From: Octopus sinensis
Lineage: Eukaryota
Direction: 5' to 3'
Assembly (NCBI RefSeq): GCF_006345805.1
Contig: NC_043007.1
Location: 13,578,001-13,642,000 of the forward strand
DNA length: 64,000 bases
This document shows, piece by piece, positions 9,880 to 63,519 of the stretch (its first letter is position 1; each line of letters starts with the position of its first letter). The notes beneath the pieces are model-generated. The model was not told where the DNA came from. It ran no database searches and saw nothing but the letters and a program-made list of their open reading frames with translations. A program made the position numbers and the translations under genes.

Positions 9880-10225
9880 AAACTAAAACTAGAACAGCAA
9901 CGGACCATGATAAAGCGATGGCAAGAAAAGACCTTTCATGGCAAGTACTGGACTAAACTAAATGCAAAAGAAATAGACAAAGAAAAACTCCAGCAATGGT
10001 TGAGAAGCTCAGGACTCAAAGCAGAGACAGAGGGTTTTTTAATTGCAGCACAAGTCTAAAGCCTCCCCACCAGAAATTACCAAAAACATGTAATGAAAAG
10101 AAATATAGCAAGTAACTGCAGAATATGTGGAGATGGACAAGAAACAATAAATCATATTATCTCTGGCTGCCCAGTCCTGGCTAAGAAGGAATATATTCAC
10201 AGACACGACAGAGTTGGGACCTACA
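9880..10225 (+). pseudogene. R4/Dong-like LINE fragment, CCHC zinc-knuckle region
   Basis: WQEKTFHGKY...WLRSSGLKAETEG...CRICGDGQETINHIISGCPVLAKKEYIHRHD is typical of R4/Dong-clade RLE LINEs. Frameshifted, and cut by SINE C. Confidence 0.85.
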
Positions 10226-10531
10226 TCATGACTGACCATTGGATTGCACCTAGAAAGTTACCCTCCCAGGCACAACCGGGCAAGGTTGTTTATGGAAGAC
10301 CAGCATACAGGCGTCCCCCTCCCCTCGCCACCAGTGTTATCCAAGGGAAAAGCAAAGGGGCCGATACAGATTGGCACCTGTGACGTTGCAACTCACTTCT
10401 GAAGCTGAGTGGACTGGAGCAACGGGGAAATAAATTGTCTTGCTCAAGAACACGACACGCAGCCCGGTCCGGAATTCGAACTCACAATCTCACGATCGTA
10501 AACCCGACGCTCTAACCACTGAGCCATGCGC
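10226..10531 (-). mobile_element. SINE family C (tRNA head + CORE-like domain)
   Basis: Reverse-complement homologue of 58287-58622. Confidence 0.85.
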
Positions 10532-11185
10532 CCCCCCCCCACACACAACACACACACACATACATATACATGCAGGTATGTATGTATGCATGTATATAGG
10601 TGAGTATGTATGTTTGCATGAATGGATGTATGTATGCGTGTATGTATGCGTGTATGCATGTATGTATGTATCTATCTATCTCTCCATCTATCCATCTGTC
10701 CATCCATCCATCTATCTATTTATCTATCTATCCACCTAGCCATATGTCTATCTATCTATCGATTGATCGATCTATCTATCCATCTATCTGTCTATCTATC
10801 CATCTATCTTTTTATATATCTATCTTTCTATCTATCTACATATCTACGCATACTGCATGTATGTATGTATGTATGAATGTATGTATGTATGAATGTATGT
10901 ATGTATGTATGTATGTATGTATGTATGTATGAATGTATGTATGTATTATATGAATGTATGTATGTATGTATGGAATGTATGTATGGTATGTAATGTATGT
11001 TAATGTATGTAATGTATGTATGTATGTAATGTATGTATGAATGTATGTATGTATATATGTATGTTTGTATGTAAGCATGTATGTATGCATGTATGTATGT
11101 ATATATATGTATGTAATGTATGTATGTGTGTATGCATGTACGTTTGTATGTATGTATGTATGTATTATGTATGTATGTATGTATA
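10530..11185. repeat. (TATG)n/(TATC)n microsatellite
   Basis: Seen directly. Confidence 0.95.
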
Positions 11186-12913: not shown

Positions 12914-13028
12914 TACGTGGTCTGATCAATAAGCATCCGGATTGTTGCCGTAGTAATGAAACTAAAGCACGCTGAGTGAAGCCGCTTGGCATGAATTGAC
13001 CCTAAGCTCTGCTGTATATATGCACTAA
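12914..13028 (+). mobile_element. Probable mariner-type 5' end (TIR-like), cut by SINE A
   Basis: tacgtggtctgatcaataagcatccgga resembles mariner TIRs (recalled). A second copy lies at 57331. Confidence 0.5.
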
Positions 13029-13447
13029 GCGCAGGAGTGGCTGTGTGGTAAGTAGCTTGCTAACCAACCACATGGTTCCGGGTTCAGTCCCACTGCGTGG
13101 CATTTTGGGCATGTGTCTTCTGCTATAGCCCCGGGCTGACCAATGCCTTGTGAGTGAATTTGGTAGACGGAAACTGAAAGAAGCCTGTCGGAATATATAT
13201 ATATATATATATATATATTGTGTGTGTGTGGTGTGTTTTGTTTCTGTGTTTGTACCCCTAGCATTGCTGACAACCGATGCTGGTGTGTTTTACGTCCCCG
13301 TCACTTAGCGGTTCGAGAGAAAAGAGACCGATAGAATCAGTACGGGCTTACAAAGAATAAGTCCCGGGGTCGATTTGCCGGACTAAAGGCGGTGCTCCAG
13401 CATGGCCGCAGTCAAATGACTGAAACAAGTAAAAGAGTAAAGAGTAA
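13029..13447 (+). mobile_element. SINE A
   Basis: Full-length copy. Confidence 0.9.
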
Positions 13448-13457
13448 TAGGCATATA

Positions 13458-13495
<38 letters not shown>

Positions 13496-13687: not shown

Positions 13688-13812
13688 GTACAATTACCAC
13701 ACCAAAGACATGTATCACATTATAGCAGGTTTGAGAAAAAGTTTGGGAAAAAACCGAGTTTCGTTGCGAAAGTAAATCCTCATAGGCGTATATGGCATTG
13801 CGAAATATATAT

Positions 13813-14228
13813 ACTCTTACTCTTTTTTACTCTTTTACTTGTTTCAGTCATTTGACTGCGGCCATGCTGGAGCACCACCTTTTAGTCGAGCAAATCGACC
13901 CCAAGACTTATTCTTTGTAAGCCAAGTACTTATTTATCGGTCTCTTTTGCCGAACCGCTAAGTGACGGGGATGTAAACACACCAGCATCGGTTGTCAAGC
14001 AATGCTAGGGGGACCAAAACACAGACACAAAACACACACATACATATATATATATATACATATACGACGGGCTTCTTTTCAGTTTCCGTCTACCCAATCC
14101 ACTCACAAGGCAATGGTCGGCCCGGGGCTATAGCAGAAGACACTTGCCCAAGAGCCACGCAGTGGGACTGAAACCGGAAACCATGTGGTTGTTTAGCAAG
14201 CTACTTACACACAGCCACTCCTGCGCTA
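13813..14228 (-). mobile_element. SINE A
   Basis: Full-length reverse copy. Confidence 0.9.
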
Positions 14229-14689: not shown

Positions 14690-14934
14690 AAACATGACGA
14701 AACAATTTTTTTTTTTTTTTTTGCCGATAACCATTATAATTTATGCGTCTGGAGTAAGTATTTCATTTATATCTCTCGTATTTGCTGCTGAAGAGGGGAA
14801 AATTTCTTATGAATTAACCCCGAAATTGGACCAATACGGTAATGACGAATTTTTTAGAGATTTCTATCGGTTTGTTTCGAGACGTATAAATTATAATGGT
14901 TATCGAAAAAAAAAAAATTTGTTTCGGCATATTT
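14690..14934. mobile_element. 245-bp foldback element with ~60-bp inverted arms (including T17/A12 tracts)
   Basis: 14725-14750 pairs with 14880-14905 (26 nt, one G.U). Outer arms 14690-14705 and 14919-14934 pair with 2 mismatches. Confidence 0.8.
14782..14842 (+). ncRNA. Intact type I hammerhead ribozyme
   Basis: Stem I ttgctg/cggtaa; core CTGAAGA 14788-14794; stem II gggg/cccc; GAAA 14822-14825; stem III attg-gac-caat; AUA cleavage triplet with predicted cut after 14836. Confidence 0.8.
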
Positions 14935-14996
14935 CCAGGAATCGAAGCCACAATCTTACGATTACACCCTAACCACTAAGCCACGCACCTCCACAA
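14935..14996 (-). mobile_element. tRNA-derived SINE head remnant
   Basis: Minus strand ggaggtgcgtggcttagtggttaggg...ttcgattcctgg carries A- and B-box-like motifs. Confidence 0.6.
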
Positions 14997-15035
14997 ACAC
15001 CCACACACACACACACACACACGTATATATACAAT

Positions 15036-15078
<43 letters not shown>

Positions 15079-15132
15079 GTATATATGTATATATGTATAT
15101 ATATTTACTTATAAATATATATACATATAATC

Positions 15133-15170
<38 letters not shown>

Positions 15171-15216
15171 ATATATATATGTATATATATTTATATGTAA
15201 AATATATATATATATA

Positions 15217-15262
<46 letters not shown>

Positions 15263-15319
15263 TATATAATCTATATATATTATATATATCATATGCAGTA
15301 ATATGTACTTCGAATTTTG

Positions 15320-15730: not shown

Positions 15731-16176
15731 ACTCTTTACTCTTTTACTCTTTTACTTGTTTCAGTCATTTGACTGCGGCCATGCTGGAGCACCGCCTTTA
15801 GTCGATCAAATCGACCCCGGAACTTATTTTTTGTAAGCCTAGTACTTATTCTATCGGTCTCTTTTGCCGAACCGCTAAGTGGCGGGGACGTAAACACACC
15901 AGCATCGGTTGTCAAGTAATGCTAGGGGGACAAACACAGACACACAAACACACACACACACACATACACATATATATATATACATATATACGACAGGCTT
16001 CTTTCAGTTTCCGTCTACCAAATCCACTCACAAGGCATTGGTCGGCCCGGGGCTATAGCAGAAGACACTTGCCCAAGATGCCACGCCGTGGGACTGAACC
16101 CGCAACCATGTTGTTGGTTAGCAAGCTACTTACCACACAGCCACTCCTGCGCCACTCCTGCGCCACTCCTGCGCCT
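15731..16176 (-). mobile_element. SINE A with triplicated 11-nt 5' end
   Basis: Full length; gccactcctgc x3 at 16140-16172. Confidence 0.9.
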
Positions 16177-17280
16177 ATTTCTATATAAGTATATATGAAT
16201 TATGTGTGTATGTAATTTTTGTATGTATCAATTAGTCTGTCTATCTTTCTGTCTCTCTGTCTTTTTCTCTATCTCTGTTTCCATCTGTCTGTCTGTCTCA
16301 ATATATATACGCACATACATATCAATGTGTGTATGAAAAGCATTATGTTTTGCAGATATGACGAAAGAGGGCATTCAAATATGGAAAATATGCTACAGAA
16401 TTTGCAGTCCCCACTGATTACAAGTGATTCTGTTTTAATCCCAAATGTCACATCATCTCTTTGAAGTAGTTTCGTCCATTTATCAACAGTTCCTCTGTCG
16501 CAAGAAAAACATCGGTTCTCGAGGCACCGACGGCGAAAGAAAAGAGGAAAAAAAAATGCGTATGGGTTAGAACTCACTTGGTGACGTAACATTTTCTGTA
16601 CAGCCATTTATAGATACATACATACACACACACACACACATACATTCATATATATATTTATATATGTATGTGTATATATAAGTGTATATATATAATATAT
16701 ATATTATATATAATGTGTGTGTTGTGTGTGTGTGTGTGTGTTGTATATATATGTTTATATATATATATAATATATATATATACATACACTTTTGTATATG
16801 TGTATATATGTATATATATATATTTCTGTATCTCTCTTCTCTCTCCCCCTCGTCCTCTCTGTTCCCCTCTTTGACTATATATGTATATGTGAGTGTATAA
16901 AGGATGTATATATATATATATATATATATCTATATATACATACATATATATGTCTGTGTGCGTGTGTGTGTGTGTGTGTGTGCGTTTGTTTGTTTATTTG
17001 TGTGTGTATATGTATGTATGTTTGTCTGAGCATGTATGTATGGAAATATTTACGTACATACATAGATTCATTCTACATCCATACTTGCATATATTGAAAC
17101 AGATCACAAGACACTACAGAGAGAGAATAGAATATTATACGCGCAGCTCAACAGGCTCCATGTAAAGACACATTAATCATCCTAGACTGTAACGAAAACC
17201 TAACAGACAAGACCATTAATAAATGCTTACATAACAACTCACTCGTTCCTCAGACGTATACATCACATTCTTGATTTCTT

Positions 17281-17696
17281 GGATCTTTTCGGTTTGAACG
17301 GCAGTTTTTTTCTAGCGGTGTCATATGAAATTGTCGCCCATAATTATGACCCTGGTATCGATCCATTGCATTTCAATCCGTTTTAGGGTTAGGGTTAGGG
17401 GTGGGGTAGGGGAGAAGGGTATGTTTTTTCTTTCTTCAGAAATGTAAATAAACCCAATCTGTTTCTTAAACGAGGGACATATTCATACGGCACAGAATGG
17501 GGCTTTTTTTTTTTTTTTTTTTACCTCAATGGACGTAATTGATTGGTTGAAATTGCAGAAATTTAAGAAAACAAAAAAAAAAAACAAATATCTTACAAAC
17601 TATAGAATATTCTCAATAAAGCCAAGAGAAAAAGACGTGTTATAAACACATTCTACCAGTATACGAAGTTTACTGCCGTTCAAACCGAAAAGATCC
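17281..17696. mobile_element. MITE / non-autonomous DNA transposon, perfect 25-bp TIR, 7-bp TSD ATTTCTT
   Basis: TIR ggatcttttcggtttgaacggcagt at 17281-17305 and its reverse complement at 17672-17696. TSD at 17274-17280 and 17697-17703. Confidence 0.9.
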
Positions 17697-18164
17697 ATTT
17701 CTTTTACCTCTTCTGTTTGATACTACAATGCCATCTTCTAAATCTATTCATATTAAGGCTCACCTGAAAAATCAACTCAGTCTTTCATCTCATTAACATG
17801 TGTTTATGTCTCGACGAATAGTTTTCATTGCAATAAATGTCAAATAGTCTATATCGTCACATATGATCTATATGAAGAACGTACTTCTTGCCAAAGCCTT
17901 CCGTAGATATCCAGTATCATTAGTTAAGCAGAATATAAACTACATTGACTTAACGGTCTTCAGTGACTGGCTGGTTATGATGGGCATACACGCGTCCTCC
18001 AGTTTGAATTATCCACAAAGGCTTAAGATAATATGAATGTTTGTATGCATGTATTTGTGTCACTGCTAGTTGTTGTATGTACACACACGCACACACTCAC
18101 ACAAACATTCAAACATACACATAGACACATATACATACACATACATACACACATAGACACACAC

Positions 18165-18347: not shown

Positions 18348-18407
18348 ATATATATATATATTAGTTAGTTAGTTAGTTAATGTTTTGGCTCAAAAAGCAA
18401 AAAGCAA

Positions 18408-18815
18408 GGCGCAGGAGTGGCTGTGTGGTAAGTAGCTTGCTAACCAACCACATGGTTCCGGGTTCAGTCCCACTGCGTGACATCTTGGGCAACTGTCTTC
18501 TGCTATAGCCCCGGGCCGACCAATGCCTTGTGAGTGGATTGGTAGCGACTGAAAACTGAAGAAGCCTGTCGTATATATGTATATATATATATATGTGTAT
18601 GTGTGTGTGTTTGTCTCCCTCGCATTGCTTGGCAACCGATGCTGGTGTGTTTACGTCCCCGTCACATAGCGGTTCGGCAAAAGAGACCGATAGAATAAGT
18701 ACTGGGCTCACAAAGAATAAGTCCCGGGGTCGATTTGCTCGACTAAAGGTGGTGCTCCAGCATGGCCGCAGTCAAATGACTGAAACAAGTAAAAGAGTAA
18801 AAGAGTAAAAAGAGA
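18408..18815 (+). mobile_element. SINE A
   Basis: Full-length copy. Confidence 0.9.
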
Positions 18816-20261: not shown

Positions 20262-21039
20262 TTAGATAAAACTTAGATATGTTTCGACCAGAGATTGGTC
20301 CAGGCCATGTCTAACTTAATAGCACCACCTGATAGATTATTCGAATCCTGTTTAAGTCAAGTTTTGTTCAAGTAGTGAGTTCTTGTTGGGTGAGTTGTAT
20401 CCAATTATGGGTGGCTTATCTGGTATTCTTTGAAGGAATCTATCCAGACTCTGTTTAAAGTTGATGGGATCCTTTTCCTCTTTGATCTCCCTCGGGACAA
20501 TGTTAAATAGGGCAGGGCCTGTTGAGGAAAAGAAATTATGTTGCAGTGTACATGTATGTTGTGATCTTGAATTTGGCAGGGGACGTATAGCCCGTGGTCC
20601 AAGTCTTGGATGGACCTTGAAGCTAATGTTTAGGTCGTTTGGGCAAAGTTGGAGGTATATTTTCCACATCGTACAAATGATGTACCGCTCACGGCGACGC
20701 TGGAGGGAGTAAAGTTTCAAGGTTTTAAGGCGATCCCAATAATCGAGAGCAGCCATGCCTTCAATTTGTTTAGTGGGAGCCCTCTGGGGTGACTCAATTC
20801 TGGAGATGTTTTGTCTTGTGTGAGGAGACCACAGTGGGCAGCAATATTCAAGGTGTGGCCGTACAAAGGAGGAAAAAAGTGGTATGATGACACCTTCTTC
20901 TCTGGACCGGAAAGTTCTAAAGATCCAGGAACTCATCCTACGAGCTATATCAACCTTCTTGTTGATGTGTGCACTCCAACTGAGATCATCATCAACAATT
21001 ACACCCAGGTCTCTGATATTGTTAGAGGCTGTGAGCGAC
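20257..21039 (-). mobile_element. CR1/L2-like LINE 3' end (RT C-terminus + 3' UTR + (ATCTAAGTTTT)n tail)
   Basis: ORF 20352-21206 gives IRDLGVIVD...RPHLEYCCPLWSPH...LYSLQRRRERY...PDKP. Confidence 0.92.
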
Positions 21040-21065
21040 ACAAATATATATATACGCAGAGCTTT

Positions 21066-21405
21066 ACTGCGTGGCACCTTGTGCAAGCGTCTCCTGCTAG
21101 AGTCTTCGGCCGGCCCAACGCGTTGTGACTGGAGTTCGTTGATGGAAACTGAAAGAAGCCAGTCGTGTATAAATATATAGATATATATATATACATATAT
21201 ATACATATATGTTTACGTTTGTGTGTCACTGTCTCCACATCGTCGCTTCACAACCGATGTTGGTGTGTTTTCGTCCTCTTAACTTAGCGTCTTGGCAAAA
21301 GGGACAGATAGAATAAGTACTATGCTTACAAAGAGTAGGTCTTGTTCGACGAAAGGCGGTGCTTCAGCTTGGCCGAAGTCAAATATCTGAGACAAATAAC
21401 AGAAT
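21066..21405 (+). mobile_element. SINE A, 5'-truncated and diverged
   Basis: actgcgtggcacctt...gaaactgaaagaagcc...aaggcggtgcttcagc. Confidence 0.8.
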
Positions 21406-21501
21406 AAAATAATGTACACACACACTCATATATATATATACAAACCTACGTACGTGCAACAAAATACACACTATATACTTATATATATATATATTATATA
21501 T

Positions 21502-22740
21502 AAAACTTAGATAAAACTTAGATATGTTTCGACCAGAGATTGGTCCAGGCCATGTCTAACTTAATAGCACCACCTGATAGGATTATTCGAATCCTGTTTA
21601 AGTCAAGTTTTGTTCAAGTAGTGAGTTCTTGTTGGGTGAGTTGTATCCAATTATGGGTGGCTTATATGGTATTCTTTGAAGGAATCTATCCAGACTCTGT
21701 TTAAAGTTGATGGGATCCTTTTCCTCTTTGATCTCCCTGGACAATGTTAAATAGGGCAGGGCCTGTTGAGGAAAAGAAATTATGTTGCAGTGTACATGTA
21801 TGTTGTGATCTTGAATTTGGCAGGGGACGTATAGCCCGTGGTCCAAGTCTTGGATGGACCTTGAAGCTAATGTTTAGGTCGTTTGGGCAAAGTTGGAGGT
21901 TATTTTTCCACATCGTACAAATGATGTACCGCTCACGGCGACGCTGGAGGGAGTAAAGTTTCAAGGTTTTAAGGCGATCCCAATAATCGAGAGCAGCCAT
22001 GCCTTCAATTTGTTTAGTGGGAGCCCTCTGGGGTGACTCAATTCTGGAGATGTTTGGTCTTGTGTGAGGAGACCACAGTGGGCAGCAATATTCAAGGTGT
22101 GGCCGTACCAAAGGAGGAAAAAAGTGGTATGATGACACCTTTTCTCTGGACCGGAAAGTTCTAAAGATCAGGAACTCATCCTACGAGCTATATCAACCTC
22201 TTGTTGATGTGTGCACTCCAACTGAGATCATCATCAACAATTACACCCAGGTCTCTGAATTGTTAGAGGCTGTGAGCGACACAAATATATATATACGCAG
22301 AGCTTTACTGCGTGGCACCTTGTGCAAGCGTCTCCTGCTAGAGTCTTCGGCCGGCCCAACGCGTTGTGACGTGACTGGAGTTCGTTGATGGAAACTGAAA
22401 GAAGCCAGGCGTGTATAAATATATAGATATATATATATACATATATATACATATTGTTTACGTTGGTGTGTCACTGTCTCCACATCGTCGCTTCACAACC
22501 GATGTTGGTGTGTTTTCGTCCTCTTAACTTAGCGTCTTGGCAAAGGGACAGATAGAATAAGTACTATGCTTACAAAGAGTAGGTCTTGTTCGACGAAAGG
22601 CGGTGGGTGCTTCAGCTTGGCCGAAGTCAAATATCTGAGACAATAACAGAATAAAATAATGTACACACACACTCATATATATATATACAAACCTACGTAC
22701 GTGCACACAAATACACACATATATACTTATATATATATAT
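21502..22740. repeat. Second copy of ~1.24-kb tandem duplication (LINE + SINE A) of 20257-21501
   Basis: Near-identical sequence differing mostly by small indels. Confidence 0.92.
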
Positions 22741-40531: not shown

Positions 40532-40854
40532 TGCCCCAGCATGGCCACAGCTCGTGAGCTGAAACTAGATCATATCATATCCTATATAGATGGATAGATA
40601 GATACATACATACATATACATATATTTACATATATATACACATATGCATACGCACATACACACAATTACACACACACATATATACACATGCATGGGTGTG
40701 TTACATATGTATGTACCGACATGTCTGTTACTTTTGTCTTTGAATAGTTTTACATTATTTATATATATATATACATACATGGCCCTTTCTAAACCAGGCA
40801 TTCAATATAACAAGTCAAACTTAACAGAAAGGCTCATTATTTTTGGGCTGGTTT

Positions 40855-40864
40855 ATTATTGTTG

Positions 40865-40931
<67 letters not shown>

Positions 40932-41082
40932 CATCATTATTATTATTATTATTATTATTATCATCATTATTATTATTATTATTATTATATTATCATTATT
41001 ATTATTATTATTATTAATATTATTATCATTATTGTTATCATTATTATTATTATTATTATTATTGTTGTTGTTATTATTATTA

Positions 41083-41150
<68 letters not shown>
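40855..41150. repeat. (TTA)n microsatellite
   Basis: Seen directly. Confidence 0.97.
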
Positions 41151-41152
<2 letters not shown>

Positions 41153-44104
41153 TGGGCATTTTGCATATATCGATTTCCGAATATTTCTATCTTTATATTA
41201 TGTTATACTCAATACCAGATAATTGATTTTTTTTTTCTTCTAATTTTAAATATCGATCTTCAAACTTACTCTCTTTTCGAAGTTAGGCATACACCTTCAC
41301 AGCTCTCCTCTCCCCGCACACGTGCATCTCTGCATACATACATGCATATATATTTATACATACATTACATACATTACATACATACACACATGCGCACACA
41401 CATACATACATACATACACACACATACATACATACGTACGTATGTACGTACATAGGTAACTGTGTGTTTCTGCTCAGAGACGCACCCATACACACGCGTA
41501 GACACAATCACACAGCCGTAGATTGACATTATAGAGTTTTTCTAAAAAAGTCTAAATCCTTCTTTCATTCTTTGAAATCGTTTCTCAGATTCTAGCTTAT
41601 GTAAAATCATTCCAGTATGTGGTTTTATTCTCCATCTATTTCCTGGATATCGATAAAAATGTCACTTTTTGGGGGATCGGTAAAATATCTATAAAGTTTT
41701 AAAATTCCTTTATTTCTTGTAACTTTCTCTGAATGAATTAAACTAGAAAGTAAAACGAAAAGAAAGAAAGAAAGAGAAAGAAATTCAATAATTTTTGGGG
41801 TGATATATTTTTTAATTTATGTATATTGATTAAATATTTATTTTACATTTATTGATTCGAGAACCTTTTGAAATGTTATTTTTCCCTCGTACTTTAAAAT
41901 TCATTTCTTCGAGATTTCATTAGAGATATTACAAATTCGAAAGTTTTACAACTGTTTTTCCATAATTTTACAAATTTATTTTCTTTCTCAGAAGGAATTA
42001 ATACTATTTTATTACAATTTTGGAATTCACATGAAATTGTCTTAATGCATATATTATTGTAGAATCCTGAAGCTGCCCTTCTTTAAAACTAGAATCGATG
42101 TTTCGTTTCTGTTCATTTTTACATAAAATATACATATAGAGTTGTGCGTCTGTTTTTTGTTAACTATTTTGATTCGTATTTTTCTGTTTACATTTGAAAA
42201 TTTATATTTTACAATTATATGTGGACTAATATTCATAATAAAAATTCATGATGAGGTAAATAAGTAAGAATCTGAATTTTAAATATTATTATAAGGATAT
42301 AAAAAGCAAACTTACATAGATATTTAACTTAAAATATGTAGCAGATGCGAGATTTATTACAACTGTTTTGTTTTGTTTCTTATGTAACTGTTTGTAACTG
42401 TTTTCGTTTTCTCTATGAACTTGTCTTTGAATATGTTTTTCGTTATGTAAGATAATAAATGAAACGTGTCGACATCATTAAAATAAAACATAACTAAATC
42501 TATATTTTCTTATATGAAACTTGGCTTCTTTATTTCGCAAAATAAATATACTAAATATACGAATACGAATACAGCCACACCTCTCTCCCTAAATATATGA
42601 AGATTGTTTAAAAAGCACTTATTTGAAAGAACAAAAACACTTGCAAAACTCAGCAAATTTTCTGAAAGCCAGCTGCCATTTAATGAAACATATTTACACC
42701 ATCTTTTTTTTTCTTTATGAATTATAAATAATAACAACATTATAAGTTTGTTTTTTCCGTAACCGGAGAATACTACAGGTTAATTTTCAATTATATGCGA
42801 GCTTTATAATAAACATATTTGCTTCCTTCTGATCCCTATATGTTCTTCGGTTAAAAACGTACAATACAATATATTTGATTTATTGTTCTGTGAAAAGTGC
42901 TAGTGGCATGATTCCCATGCTAATTTACACGTGTTTGTAGATACCATGCTTTATTCTATATATCACACCAAAGCTTTTACTGGTAGAAAGTTCCAACTGC
43001 AAATGCTAAATATTCCTTTTTTTTCCATAAACGTCCTTTCTGATGAACTGAAAATGTTACAAACACACACATTCAATATTTATACACCATATTATTGCAT
43101 TTGAATTTTTTGCCATCGATTCCACTGTGTCCTTAGATTATTTGATACCGTTCTGAATGTGAAAATACCATTAAAAAGCTGTTCTTCTTCTTAAATGATA
43201 TATAGGAATGGTTTCTACTTTATGACTCATTGAGATCTAAGGAATTGTATCATTATTATTTTTATTATTATTATTATTATTATTATTGCTGTTGTTGTTG
43301 TTGTTGCTATTATTATCCTTTCTCCGCAAGGTAATGCACGAAATCACCTACTCATTCAATGGAATGTTGAATTTGAATCCCAGATACCGAGCCTAACATT
43401 ATATACATATAATATATATATATATATATAAATATATTTCATCTATATGATAAAGTTACAACCAGTTGAAGCATTTTCTTTGTATATTTTCAATAAACAC
43501 TCGGATCGTTGAGGACATGTAAAGACCCTTCAGATATAGAATTTCGAAGCTTCGGCTTCAGAATATCGAATCTTTAAAAGTCACTCTCACCTGAAACAGG
43601 GAATGAGAGGACCCTACCTTTTCTTTAGACTTCTCAAGACAAGAAACATATCTCTGACTTATCAATTGGGACTTCTTTCACATCTATTGATGCAAACTAT
43701 TTTTTTTCCCTTGTCGGTAAATGCTTTTCTTTGTTTAGTGAGTGGACTTGGGCGTGTACATCGCCTTTTCTAACTTCAAATAGCCTCAGATACTGGCATC
43801 GATTGATTTTTAACAGTTCTGTTAATATCTCATTTGTGCGTTGCTTTAATATGGTTAGCCGTAGCGGAAAAATATAAATCACTTAATAAAAATTCCATGA
43901 TGACAAGAAGATTCTTTGAACACCTGCTGCAAGAAAAGCTCATAATTTCCCCATAAAAAAGTGTAGATCCCAAGGAAGGTTGAATAATCATTTCTGTACA
44001 GCTTGTCGTTAAGAGTACAATCCGCTGATGGGATTGCTCTAAATACATATCATACATATATGTGTGTATAAATATTTGTATGAATCTACGTGTATATATA
44101 TGCA

Positions 44105-57720: not shown

Positions 57721-58286
57721 TCGCATTTCTGCCCTTGAAGATATATATATTTTTTGTACACGTGCATCCATGACATTAGGGAGAGAAGAAGTTATATTTT
57801 GCCTGAGAATTATGCTAAGTTTATATACATAATGTGAAATATTCAGGGACTTACATCCAATTTTGTAGACTGGTAAGTCAGTTGATTAAACAACTGAACA
57901 CTTATTCTTGAAAAATTACAGGATCCATCTATATATACACATTCATTTTTCATACAAAGATGCACTCACACATATGTATAGATACCCATATACAAACATA
58001 TTCACACAGACGCATGTATATGATTTAAGAGCGAGTATAAAACCCGATTCTAATAAATAAAATAATTAAATGTACAGAGAAATAAGTAAATAAATAACTA
58101 AATAAATAGGGAATAAATAATCTTCTTTAATTGAAATTTCCTTCTTCGTCGAAATGAAACGCAAAAACGAAACAACTACGATCTACTCTCAGACAGAGGA
58201 AGAGATAATTTGAAATCCTTTTTCAGCAATATAACTCAAAGTTAAATTACCTACGTTCAGTTTTGTACATAGTTTATTCAGGCATT

Positions 58287-58622
58287 GTGAAGGCGTGTGG
58301 CTCAGTGGTTAGAGCGCCGAGCTTACGGTCGTGAGGTTGTGAGTTTGAAATATGGACCAGACTGCGTGTTGCGTTCTTGAGCATGACACTTTATTTCACG
58401 TTGCTCCAGTTCACTCAGCTGTAGAAATGAGTTGCGAAGTCACAGGTGCCAAGCTGTAATGGACGTTACCTTTCCCTTGGATAACACTGGTGGCGTGGAG
58501 AGGGGAGCCCGGTGTGCATGGGCGACTGCTGGTCTTTCATAAACAACCTTGCCCGGACTTGTGTCTAGGAGGGTAACTTTCTAGGTGCAATCCCACGGTC
58601 AGTCATGACCGAAGGGGGTCTC
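58287..58622 (+). mobile_element. SINE family C, full length
   Basis: tRNA head tggctcagtggttagagc; CORE-like ttcttgagcatgacactttatttcac. Confidence 0.88.
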
Positions 58623-59094
58623 AATAACAATTGAAGCATTACCCTTAACGTGGAAAAATGCTTCCACATAGAGCATGATTTACGAATATGTGGTCCGTAT
58701 GCCGGTGCTTGTGGCGGCACTCATCATCATCACCATCAACATTATTGTTACCATCATTCTCGATGTCATCGTTCACATCGCTGTAATCATCATCATTGTC
58801 ATCATCAGGAATACAATCATATTTTCACATGGAGACGAACAACTTCAACATCATCAAAACCTCCACCATCACCCTCATCATTTTATGACCACCACTACCA
58901 AGAATAAAATGAGCCACCGTTTGCACATGCATCACCATCTCTATCGCCATCGCCATCACGCTGAGAAAGAAGTGCGGCTCCGAGACAGTCCACGTTTGAG
59001 TACCACTGTTAATAATTTGCATATTATAATGACAAGTACCACGGTTATTACTACCACCACTACAACAAAAATTCCCCACCACTGTCAAAAACGA

Positions 59095-59099
59095 ATAAT

Positions 59100-59189
<90 letters not shown>

Positions 59190-59216
59190 AAGAAGAAGAA
59201 GAAGAAGAAGAAGAAG

Positions 59217-59248
<32 letters not shown>

Positions 59249-59350
59249 GAAGAAGAAGAAGAAGAAGAGAAGAAGAAGAAGAAGTAGAAGAAGAAGAAGA
59301 AGAAGAAGAAGAAGAAGAAGAAGAAGAAGAAGAAGAAGAAGAAGAAGAAT
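59095..59350. repeat. (AAT)n(AAG)n microsatellite
   Basis: Seen directly. Confidence 0.97.
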
Positions 59351-59359
59351 AGACCTTAA

Positions 59360-60816: not shown

Positions 60817-60901
<85 letters not shown>

Positions 60902-61140
60902 CAGTGGTAAGGGTGTCAGCATAATGATAGTAAGATTGCTGTTTCGTTTCCTGGACCGGGCGACGCGTTGTGTTCTTGAGCAAAGCACTTCATTTCCCGT
61001 TGCTCCAATCCCCTCAGCTGGCAAAAACGAGTAACGCTGCAATGGACTGGTGTCCCGTCCAGCTGGGGAACACATACGCCATTGAAACCGGGAAACCGGG
61101 CCCATGACACTGCCTAGGCTTTAAAAGGGCTCATTTATTT
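60902..61140 (+). mobile_element. SINE family F (tRNA head, CORE-like box, V-domain-like tail)
   Basis: gtgttcttgagcaaagcactt...ctgcaatggactggtgtcccgtccagctggg. The domain names are recalled, not verified. Confidence 0.75.
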
Positions 61141-62629: not shown

Positions 62630-63225
62630 AACTAATACTACTTCTACTACTACTACTACTACTACTAGTAGTAGTAGTAGTAGTAGTAGTAGTACTCCTA
62701 CTATTATTGCTGTTGCTGCGCTACTATTATTGCTGTTGCTACGGTACTAAGTTATTGTTGTGGTCATTTCTTTCCACACCTTCTCATCTTCCGCCCCTTA
62801 CTCTTCCTCAACGTCATCATTAACATCACCACCAACACGAAGACAACGACCACTACCACCACCGCTATGACAACTACTACTACTACTACTACTACTACTA
62901 CAACAACTATTACCACTACTACTACTAATAATAATAATAGTAATAATACAACTACTACTACTACTACTATTACTTATACTACTACTAATACTACTGCTAA
63001 TACTACTACTACTACTCCTACAACTACTACTACTACTACTAATATTACTAATGCTACTACTACTACTGCTGCTGCTGCTGGTGCCACTACTATAACAACT
63101 ACTACAACTACTACTACTATTGCTGCCGCTAATACAACAACAACACCAACAACTACTACCACTGCTGCTGCTGCTACTACTACTACTACTACTACTACGA
63201 CTACTACAAATACGTACGAACGTTT
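62560..63225. repeat. (CTA)n-based compound trinucleotide repeats
   Basis: Seen directly; they explain the poly-T ORFs. Confidence 0.95.
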
Positions 63226-63519
63226 CATTGCTATTATTTATTATTTTTTCAAGTATTTATAACTTTCCTCGTCAGTGTAACATTTTTCTTTGGCAACTAC
63301 AGAACTGTCGCTGCCTCTCAAATTTCCCTAATTACACTTTCTGCCAGTCCATATAGCCTTAAATCTCTGGCATTGGCCCTTTGCTATTTAGTACTTTGTT
63401 CTGTTCTATATTATATATTTTTCACCGTCTTTATCCATTCACGTTTATAACAACACAGTAATACTGAACACGGTGTAACGAAATATACGCCCTACATGTG
63501 TATTTCCATAGACATTCAA

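What the first reader, a model, noticed from the sequence alone, without database searches (positions are those of the whole stretch)
14690..14934. Intact hammerhead ribozyme at the tip of a 245-nt rod-like foldback (viroid/retrozyme-like unit)
Seen: a complete type I HHR with stem I ttgctg/cggtaa, CUGAAGA, stem II gggg/cccc, GAAA, stem III attg/caat and an AUA site (cut after 14836). Stem I continues past a 2x2 loop (tcgt/acga), then atctc/gagat, then a 26-bp arm whose only mismatch is G.U on the + strand. Beyond that are T17/A12 tracts and a further 16-bp arm, so the whole unit folds as a rod with the ribozyme at its apex. Known: type I HHRs occur in Penelope-like elements and non-autonomous metazoan retrozymes, some of which make circRNAs. 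Inference: this is a TIR-bounded or inverted-end HHR element not explained by any SINE or LINE here. It could be a self-cleaving mobile RNA or a MITE that captured a ribozyme.
Basis: partly seen in the sequence, partly recalled or inferred. Interest (0 to 1): 0.88.

Follow-up and report, generated by a model that had tools for sequence, protein, structure and literature searches.

The report
Hammerhead-like motif inside a foldback
A 245-base inverted-repeat insertion in what looks like octopus DNA holds a sequence that fits every rule of a minimal self-cutting hammerhead RNA, but no evidence reachable here shows that it evolved as a ribozyme or moves, so it stays a candidate that is cheap to check.

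Summary
On the + strand, 14782-14842 has helix I (6 bp, two of them G.U), CUGAAGA, helix II GGGG/CCCC, GAAA, helix III AUUG/CAAU, and an AUA site with the cut after 14836. This lies between inverted arms 14690-14753 and 14877-14934.

A motif of this quality is rare by chance: about 0.001 per 64-kb window, and about 0.0002 if G10.1-C11.1 is also required. That still allows tens of chance hits in a genome of about 2.7 Gb (a size assumed, not measured).

The "rod" consists of the outer arms only. The 123-nt spacer folds no better than shuffles, and the helices said to continue helix I are at chance level. The hammerhead fold holds 0.08-4% of the predicted ensemble.

No Rfam hammerhead model matches, even at E<=10 on 96 nt. 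The window has no second copy, no tandem array, no target-site duplication and no Penelope-like ORF nearby. The source genome is not in the searchable collections, so conservation could not be tested.

My verdict is close to even. An unselected consensus match in a compositionally distinct foldback insertion gets about 0.45. A relic of a hammerhead-bearing retroelement inserted head-to-head gets about 0.3. A BLAST against the source genome would decide.

The parts
14690..14753 (.). Left arm of the inverted repeat. It consists of an outer 16 nt, T17 at 14706-14722, and a 26-nt inner arm at 14725-14750.
   Evidence: Self-BLAST pairs 14690-14753 with 14934-14877 at 82.8% over 64 positions. The 28-mer search finds only these two copies in the window.
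14877..14934 (.). Right arm of the inverted repeat. It consists of the inner arm 14880-14905, A12 at 14906-14917, and an outer 17 nt.
   Evidence: The arms drive the fold z-scores of -7.5 and -9.1. CpG observed/expected is 2.7 in the left arm and 5.2 in the right arm.
14754..14876 (.). The 123-nt spacer between the arms. It is not significantly self-complementary.
   Evidence: Its MFE of -20.1 compares with a shuffle mean of -21.6 (z = +0.43). The palindrome alignment is no better than 27-63% of shuffles. Pairing of the inner flanks is no better than 71% of shuffles.
14782..14842 (+). Type-I hammerhead-consensus motif. Helix I is 14782-87 / 14837-42. The core CUGAAGA is 14788-94. Helix II is 14795-98 / 14818-21 with loop 2 at 14799-14817. 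G12-A14 is 14822-24. Helix III is 14825-28 / 14832-35 with loop GAC.
   Evidence: Read from the sequence. It is the only descriptor hit in the window. The chance rate is 0.001 per window. No Rfam hammerhead model matches. The three-helix fold is 1-3.5 kcal/mol above the MFE.
14836..14837 (+). Predicted scissile bond, 3' of A17 in the AUA triplet.
   Evidence: Follows from the hammerhead numbering applied. No cleavage was tested.
14935..14995 (-). The 3'-truncated tRNA-like head of a SINE, directly abutting the right arm. The A box TGGCTTAGTGG (14973-83) and the B box GCTTCGATTCC (within 14938-49) look intact. On the minus strand, T12 follows the head after 17 nt.
   Evidence: BLAST to the SINE copy at 10471-10547 gives E = 5e-4. 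It aligns to the SINE copies at 10226-10532, 58280-58620 and 60905-61130 as far as '...TTCCTGG'. The left flank holds no SINE body.

Best explanation
The 245-nt unit is a real inverted-repeat (foldback) insertion or inverted duplication in AT-rich, repeat-rich DNA, lying next to a truncated SINE, and its composition differs from the surrounding sequence. Its 123-nt spacer happens to satisfy the minimal type-I hammerhead consensus. I judge that match slightly more likely to be unselected than to be an evolved ribozyme.

If the + strand is transcribed, the two 64-nt arms would close a long imperfect hairpin. The hammerhead fold would be a minor conformer. It could cut slowly after A14836 at high Mg2+, as any minimal hammerhead does, and the two products would stay held together by the arms.

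Shown: the sequence, the foldback, the chance rates, and the lack of structure in the spacer. Inferred: that no selection acts on the motif, and the weak activity.
For: - No Rfam hammerhead model matches at the gathering score on the whole window, nor at E<=10 on 601 nt or on 96 nt. In contrast, canonical cephalopod hammerheads are Rfam-detectable: 235 Hammerhead_1 loci were reported in the giant squid (PMC6962438).
- Helix I has two G.U pairs in six, and loop 2 is 19 nt. Both are typical of simulated chance hits: 29 of 42 chance hits with helix I >=6 bp have two or more G.U, and 73% of chance hits have loop 2 >=15 nt.
- The spacer is no more structured than shuffles, and the supposed continuation of helix I is at chance level.
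- The hammerhead fold has a Boltzmann weight of 0.0008-0.04. An upstream hairpin (14753-61 / 14778-86) sequesters the 5' strand of helix I in the MFE fold.
- The window holds a single copy, no tandem array, and no target-site duplication beyond 'CC' (and the sequence).
- At 0.001 chance hits per 64 kb, an assumed genome of about 2.7 Gb would carry about 40 hits of this quality.
- Specialists discard descriptor hits that do not group into families (PMC4209133).
Against: - For a single window, the motif is improbable: 0.001, or about 0.0002 with the conserved G10.1-C11.1 pair.
- Helix III with a 3-nt quasi-palindromic loop is untypical of chance hits (9% have loop 3 <=5 nt) and typical of natural ribozymes.
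- The helix sizes of 6 and 4 bp are the canonical ones.
- The motif sits almost centred in the spacer of one of only four non-simple inverted repeats in the window, whose spacers together make up 1.7% of it.
- The unit is compositionally distinct, with the highest CpG observed/expected (2.3) among windows of similar GC. That suggests a discrete inserted element.
Confidence: 0.45

Rival explanations
1. The locus is a relic of a hammerhead-bearing retroelement, of the Penelope-like or retrozyme-related kind, that inserted as a head-to-head pair of 5'-truncated copies. The left arm would be the inverted 64-nt 3' end of one copy. The right copy (about 14754-14934) would be longer and still carry the element's type-I hammerhead about 98 nt from its 3' end. 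The ribozyme would have served the parent element's RNA processing and would be a neutral leftover at this locus.
For: - Penelope-like insertions are often 5'-truncated, with an adjacent inverted 5'-truncated copy that creates inverted repeats. They carry hammerheads in their terminal repeats and favour microsatellite targets (PMC8557442).
- A Penelope-like protein cleaves and extends both DNA strands in vitro (PMC11167929).
- Most Penelope-associated hammerheads occur as single motifs from truncated copies (PMC4209133).
- Penelope-like elements are one of the six TE orders charted in the Octopus vulgaris repeat annotation (PMC13282606).
- This reading explains four observations together: the motif lies inside an inverted repeat, the spacer is not rod-like, there is no clear target-site duplication, and the unit is compositionally distinct.
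- (TA)n and (CA)n tracts flank the locus.
- The two G.U pairs in helix I could be transitions acquired after insertion. The arms differ from each other by about 9%.
Against: - No RT or GIY-YIG ORF lies within about 10 kb.
- The motif lacks the marks of metazoan Penelope mini-hammerheads: there is no unpaired base between positions 9 and 10.1, and helix III is a full 4 bp.
- It does not resemble the canonical loop sequences, so Rfam misses it.
- The T17 and A12 tracts inside the arms are not a described Penelope-like feature.
- The spacer could equally belong to the left, antisense copy.
- No related copy could be fetched.
Confidence: 0.3
2. This is the first reader's proposal: an active, previously undescribed foldback element (MITE-like, or a self-cleaving mobile RNA) whose terminal inverted repeats clamp helix I of a functional hammerhead.
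For: The consensus is complete with canonical 6/4-bp helices. The motif is nearly concentric with the inverted repeat: the helix I axis is at 14812 and the arm axis at 14815. The joint chance of such a motif falling in an inverted-repeat spacer is roughly 0.001 x 0.017 per window. CpG content is high, as in a young insertion.
Against: - There is one copy in 64 kb and no target-site duplication.
- A single ribozyme cannot release a unit-length or circular RNA.
- A ribozyme has no role in cut-and-paste DNA transposition.
- The sequence between the arms and the ribozyme is not structured above chance.
- No report links hammerheads to MITEs in the searched literature.
Confidence: 0.12
3. The relevant feature is the long hairpin rather than the hammerhead. 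Transcripts through the inverted repeat would form an imperfect duplex of about 60 bp that could feed small-RNA or A-to-I editing pathways. This does not exclude the other explanations.
For: The hairpin is strong on both strands (z = -7.5 and -9.1), with a 26-bp nearly perfect inner duplex.
Against: There is no expression data. The only Rfam matches in the element are far below their gathering scores, for example MIR2646 at 15.9 bits against 245. Inverted repeats like this are common by-products of insertions.
Confidence: 0.1

Closest known systems
Canonical metazoan type-I hammerhead ribozymes (Schistosoma, newt satellite, invertebrate retrozymes)
   Same: It shares the type-I topology, the full core CUGANGA / GAAA / UH, the G10.1-C11.1 pair, a 6-bp helix I followed by an internal loop, a 4-bp helix II, and a short quasi-palindromic helix III (architecture from PMC4209133).
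   Different: The loop sequences bear no resemblance, so no Rfam model matches. Loop 2 is 19 nt rather than a few nt. Helix I has two G.U pairs. No family and no tandem context were found.
Metazoan non-LTR retrozymes (tandem 150-450-bp repeats expressed as circRNAs)
   Same: The unit is 245 nt with low GC (29%), carries a type-I motif, and is partly self-complementary (PMC7229834).
   Different: There is a single unit with a single ribozyme and no tandem repeat. Self-pairing is confined to the terminal arms.
Penelope-like element terminal repeats with hammerheads, and their inverted 5'-truncated partner copies
   Same: A solitary hammerhead-type motif lies inside an inverted-repeat structure near microsatellites. 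This geometry is described for Penelope-like insertions (PMC8557442; PMC11167929).
   Different: No RT/GIY-YIG ORF is nearby. The motif is not of the mini-hammerhead type. A/T tracts lie in the arms. Homology to any Penelope-like element was not tested.
Isolated intronic type-I hammerheads of amniotes (HH9, HH10)
   Same: It would be an isolated, non-tandem type-I motif whose helix I is prolonged by flanking sequence. Isolated mammalian motifs are mentioned in PMC7229834; the details are from my own knowledge.
   Different: Those are deeply conserved and have Rfam models. This one matches neither model, and its conservation is unknown.
MITE-like foldback elements
   Same: It is short and AT-rich with terminal inverted repeats. 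A clearer example lies at 17280-17697 in the same window.
   Different: It has no target-site duplication and no second copy in the window. Its arms are 64 nt long and only 83% alike.

Membership tests
Hammerhead ribozyme, type I | Conserved core C3-U4-G5-A6-N7-G8-A9, G12-A13-A14, the A15.1-U16.1 pair, and H17 not G | tested here: met
   CUGAAGA is at 14788-94, GAA at 14822-24, the A14825-U14835 pair is present, and A17 is 14836.
Hammerhead ribozyme, type I | Three helices around the core with helix I open, and a G10.1-C11.1 pair closing helix II | tested here: met
   The helices are 6 bp (two G.U), 4 bp (all G-C) and 4 bp. The fold lies 1-3.5 kcal/mol above the MFE.
Hammerhead ribozyme, type I | Match to curated covariance models (Rfam release 15, which should include the hammerhead families) | tested here: not met
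   No hit at the gathering score, nor at E<=10 on 601 nt or on 96 nt.
Hammerhead ribozyme, type I | Tertiary contacts between loop 1 and loop 2 that give activity at physiological Mg2+ | not testable with these tools
   An internal loop follows 6 bp of helix I and a loop follows 4 bp of helix II, which is the right geometry. The conserved loop nucleotides are not recognisable.
Hammerhead ribozyme, type I | A family of homologues with a conserved core and compensatory changes in the helices | not testable with these tools
   No second copy in the window. The metagenome and viral 19-mer hits are chance matches. The ORF-based searches found nothing. The source genome is absent from the collections.
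Hammerhead ribozyme, type I | Self-cleavage | not testable with these tools
   This needs an experiment.
Metazoan non-LTR retrozyme | Head-to-tail tandem repeats of 150-450 bp, each with a type-I hammerhead | tested here: not met
   One copy of the motif and of the arms in 64 kb, and no tandem repeat.
Metazoan non-LTR retrozyme | Low GC content and a highly self-paired RNA | tested here: inconclusive
   GC is 0.29. Self-pairing comes only from the terminal arms, and the spacer has z = +0.43.
Metazoan non-LTR retrozyme | Expression as linear and circular RNA | not testable with these tools
   No RNA data were available.
Penelope-like element (hammerhead in the terminal repeat) | An RT plus GIY-YIG ORF flanked by terminal repeats | tested here: not met
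   The ORFs of >=100 aa within about 10 kb that were scanned have no such Pfam domains. The only retroelement coding piece is a LINE ORF2 tail at 20352-22138. A truncated copy would not need the ORF.
Penelope-like element (hammerhead in the terminal repeat) | An inverted 5'-truncated partner copy forming inverted repeats, and a microsatellite-rich target | tested here: inconclusive
   The geometry is compatible. It was inferred, not shown by homology.
Penelope-like element (hammerhead in the terminal repeat) | Mini-hammerhead traits: an unpaired base between positions 9 and 10.1, a long helix II, and little or no helix III | tested here: not met
   There is no extra base after A9, and helix III is 4 bp. 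Helix II can be read as 4+4 bp around an AA/AA mismatch (criteria).
MITE | Terminal inverted repeats | tested here: met
   The arms are 14690-14753 / 14877-14934, 83% alike.
MITE | Target-site duplication | tested here: not met
   The flanks read ...TAATGCC | ... | CCAGGAA..., so only 'CC' is shared.
MITE | Many dispersed copies | tested here: inconclusive
   None in this window. The rest of the genome could not be reached.

The most novel reading that the evidence does not exclude
This would be a previously undescribed lineage of type-I hammerhead, unrelated in sequence to the canonical metazoan ribozymes. It would be carried by small foldback-forming insertions in a cephalopod genome. The long terminal hairpin would clamp helix I, so the transcript would be at once a self-cleaving RNA and a long dsRNA.
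Probability: 0.12. Interest if true: 0.7.

Novelty: new member of a known kind. Interest (0 to 1): 0.35.

Why it matters
If the motif belongs to a family, it would add a cephalopod lineage to the hammerhead-bearing retroelements. It would also give an example of a ribozyme framed by the inverted copies that Penelope-type insertion produces, which bears on how these elements integrate. If it is single-copy, it is a useful calibration point. In AT-rich animal DNA, a consensus-complete hammerhead of this quality turns up by chance about once per 64 Mb, so consensus alone, or even in vitro cleavage, should not be read as function.

Tried and rejected
- **Rfam.** Three searches (whole window at gathering score; 601 nt and 96 nt at E<=10) gave no hammerhead or other ribozyme. 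Only microsatellite-driven miRNA look-alikes appeared at 15011-15100.
- **Other copies in the window.** Searches with the arm, the ribozyme core and BLAST at word size 7 found none.
- **Exact 19-mer of the arm in metagenome and viral contigs.** The 21 loci matched at most 24 nt, each at a single site, so these are chance matches.
- **The 126-aa ORF that runs through the element, used as a handle to find copies.** It has no relatives in the 5.8-billion-protein search. The exhaustive search gave one hit, P0121 at E = 5.7e-4. That hit is a 255-nt tandem repeat from a metagenome with no DNA similarity, so it is spurious.
- **Sampling the source genome through a LINE protein.** The best relative is only 61% identical in protein and 71% in DNA, on a 934-bp contig of GCA_024449705.1. 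The source genome is therefore not in the collections.
- **Foldback splitting a SINE.** Rejected, because the left flank has no SINE body.
- **Spacer as a decayed palindrome.** Rejected.
- **tRNA gene at 14935-14995.** ARAGORN finds none. It is a degenerate SINE head.
- **Searching papers for sequence strings from the element and the SINE.** No hits. The octopus assignment therefore rests on my own recollection of the abundant SINE and is unverified.
- **TE libraries in paper supplements.** None are held.

Full report
**What is in the sequence**

On the + strand:
- Helix I is TTGCTG (14782-87) paired with CGGTAA (14837-42). It is 6 bp, and two of the pairs are G.U.
- The core CUGAAGA is at 14788-94.
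- Helix II is GGGG (14795-98) / CCCC (14818-21), closing a 19-nt loop.
- GAAA is at 14822-25.
- Helix III is AUUG (14825-28) / CAAU (14832-35), with a GAC loop.
- A17 is 14836, so the predicted cut lies between 14836 and 14837.

G10.1-C11.1 and A15.1-U16.1 are present. Outside the motif lie TCGT/ACGA, ATCTC/GAGAT, a 26-bp arm (14725-50 / 14880-905) with one G.U on the + strand, T17/A12 tracts, and an outer arm.

**Is it more than chance?**

I wrote a hammerhead descriptor that allows G.U pairs and loops up to 40 nt. It finds this site and nothing else on either strand of the window, and nothing in the reversed window.

In 6000 windows generated with an order-3 Markov model of the window (smaller runs), the rates per 64 kb are:
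- 0.04 for a minimal hit (helices >=4, 3 and 3 bp);
- 0.001 for a hit as good as this one (>=6, 4 and 4 bp);
- about 0.0002 if G10.1-C11.1 is also required.

For one window the motif is therefore unusual. A genome of about 2.7 Gb (a size I assumed, not measured) would still hold roughly 40 such hits by chance.

Compared with simulated chance hits, the candidate gives mixed signals:
- It resembles chance hits in its long loop 2. Of the chance hits, 73% have 15 nt or more.
- It resembles chance hits in its G.U-rich helix I. Of 42 chance hits with helix I >=6 bp, 29 have two or more G.U pairs.
- It differs from chance hits in its 3-nt loop 3. Only 9% have 5 nt or fewer.
- It differs from chance hits in its G-C closing pair. 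About 8% have it.

**The rod**

The 245 nt fold far better than shuffles on both strands (z = -7.5 and -9.1). All of that signal comes from the 64-nt arms:
- The 123-nt spacer alone has z = +0.43, and it is not a decayed palindrome.
- The segments that link the arms to the motif pair no better than 71% of shuffles. With the helix I strands included, 16-26% of shuffles pair as well or better.
- The MFE structures do not contain helices I and III. The best fold that contains all three helices is 1-3.5 kcal/mol higher, with a Boltzmann weight of 0.0008-0.04 depending on context. An upstream hairpin competes for the 5' strand of helix I.

'A ribozyme at the apex of a rod' therefore overstates the case. 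It is a hammerhead-type motif lying nearly centred in the unstructured spacer of an inverted repeat.

**Curated models and relatives**

Rfam gives no hammerhead match at the gathering score on the whole window, nor at E<=10 on 601 nt or on 96 nt. Canonical cephalopod hammerheads are detectable this way: 235 Hammerhead_1 loci were reported for the giant squid (PMC6962438). If this motif is a ribozyme, it does not belong to the canonical lineage.

No second copy of the arms or the core exists in the window. I could not reach the rest of the genome:
- The arm 19-mer finds only chance matches of at most 24 nt in metagenome and viral contigs.
- The ORF through the element has no relatives. The one hit from the exhaustive search is spurious.
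- A LINE ORF from the window has its best relative at 61% protein identity, on a contig of another assembly.

Conservation and covariation, which specialists use to separate real motifs from random ones (PMC4209133), therefore remain untested.

**Context**

The window looks like octopod DNA. That assignment rests on my recollection of the abundant roughly 400-bp SINE at 13822-14226 and 15739-16152, and I could not verify it.

The right arm abuts the tRNA-like head of another SINE family on the minus strand (14935-14995). The head is cut off exactly at the arm, and its body is absent from the left flank. The foldback therefore arose or arrived after that SINE, with loss of the SINE's 3' part.

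The flanks share only 'CC', so there is no target-site duplication.

The unit is compositionally distinct. It has 12 CpG against 5.2 expected (observed/expected 2.3), the highest among windows of similar GC, while the left flank has 0.67. This favours a discrete inserted element. Only four non-simple inverted repeats with spacers of 400 nt or less occur in the window, and their spacers cover 1.7% of it.

**Comparison with known systems**

- *Canonical metazoan type-I hammerheads.* These have a 6-bp helix I, a 4-bp helix II and a short palindromic helix III, and the candidate matches those sizes.
- *Metazoan retrozymes.* These are tandem 150-450-bp repeats, each with a ribozyme (PMC7229834). 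That defining feature is not met here, and a single ribozyme cannot release a circle.
- *Penelope-like elements.* These carry hammerheads in their terminal repeats. They are often 5'-truncated, often have an inverted truncated partner that creates inverted repeats, and favour microsatellites (PMC8557442). A Penelope-like protein cuts and extends both DNA strands (PMC11167929). Most Penelope-associated hammerheads are solitary. Such elements are one of the six TE orders charted in Octopus vulgaris (PMC13282606).

The Penelope-like features suggest a concrete alternative. The left arm would be the inverted 3' end of one truncated copy, and 14754-14934 would be a longer copy that still contains the hammerhead. 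This fits the geometry, but homology does not support it. No RT/GIY-YIG ORF lies nearby, and the motif lacks the mini-hammerhead traits.

I found no report of a hammerhead in a MITE.

**Verdict**

The evidence is close to balanced.
- About 0.45: an unselected match to the minimal consensus, inside a real foldback insertion.
- About 0.3: a relic of a hammerhead-bearing retroelement inserted head-to-head.

The hairpin itself may matter as dsRNA, and that reading does not exclude the others.

In vitro cleavage alone would not discriminate, because minimal hammerheads cleave at high Mg2+ whether or not they evolved to do so (my own knowledge). Copy number, conservation and covariation in the source genome would discriminate, and they are a few minutes' work for anyone who has the assembly.

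Noticed in passing
window 17280-17697: A MITE-like element with perfect 26-bp terminal inverted repeats (TGGATCTTTTCGGTTTGAACGGCAG and its reverse complement), flanked by a direct TTTCT that may be a 5-bp target-site duplication. Inside are telomere-like TTAGGG-type repeats (about 17385-17415) and T18 / A13 tracts.
   Followed up: partly
window 14906-14995, minus strand: The truncated SINE head keeps apparently intact Pol III A and B boxes (TGGCTTAGTGG, GCTTCGATTCC). On the minus strand it is followed after 17 nt by T12, the A12 of the foldback's right arm. The foldback may therefore terminate a short Pol III transcript.
   Followed up: no
window 13822-14226, 15739-16152, 13028-13462 and others (e.g. 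1542-2042, 18373-18711): Many copies of a roughly 400-bp SINE with an internal (CA)n(TA)n microsatellite. Two direct copies 1917 bp apart bracket the locus, and one inverted pair lies at 13028-13462 / 13805-14227. From memory these resemble the abundant octopus SINE. This is not verified.
   Followed up: partly
window 10226-10532 (-), 58280-58620 (+), 60905-61130 (+): A second SINE family with a tRNA-like head and a '...TTCTTGAGCA...CACTCAGCTG...' core. An ORF on the opposite strand overlapping the first copy (10060-10380) gives a sub-threshold Pfam zf-RVT hit. This hints that the SINE tail derives from a LINE 3' end.
   Followed up: partly
window 20352-21206 and 21701-22138, minus strand: Two nearly identical copies of the C-terminal tail of a LINE ORF2, forming a local duplication about 1.35 kb apart. 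The best relative in the databases is only 61% identical.
   Followed up: partly
window 14690-14934: CpG observed/expected of 2.3 in a 29% GC unit is the highest in the window for this GC range. Nine of the twelve CpGs sit in TCG or CGA contexts.
   Followed up: partly
window 15000-15300, 60820-60900, 2177-2894, 40644-41226, 58675-59352, 62867-63262: Long microsatellites ((CA)n(TA)n, (GATA)n, trinucleotide runs) produce long low-complexity ORFs and sub-threshold Rfam miRNA look-alikes (mir-3149, mir-297). These are artefacts of simple repeats.
   Followed up: no
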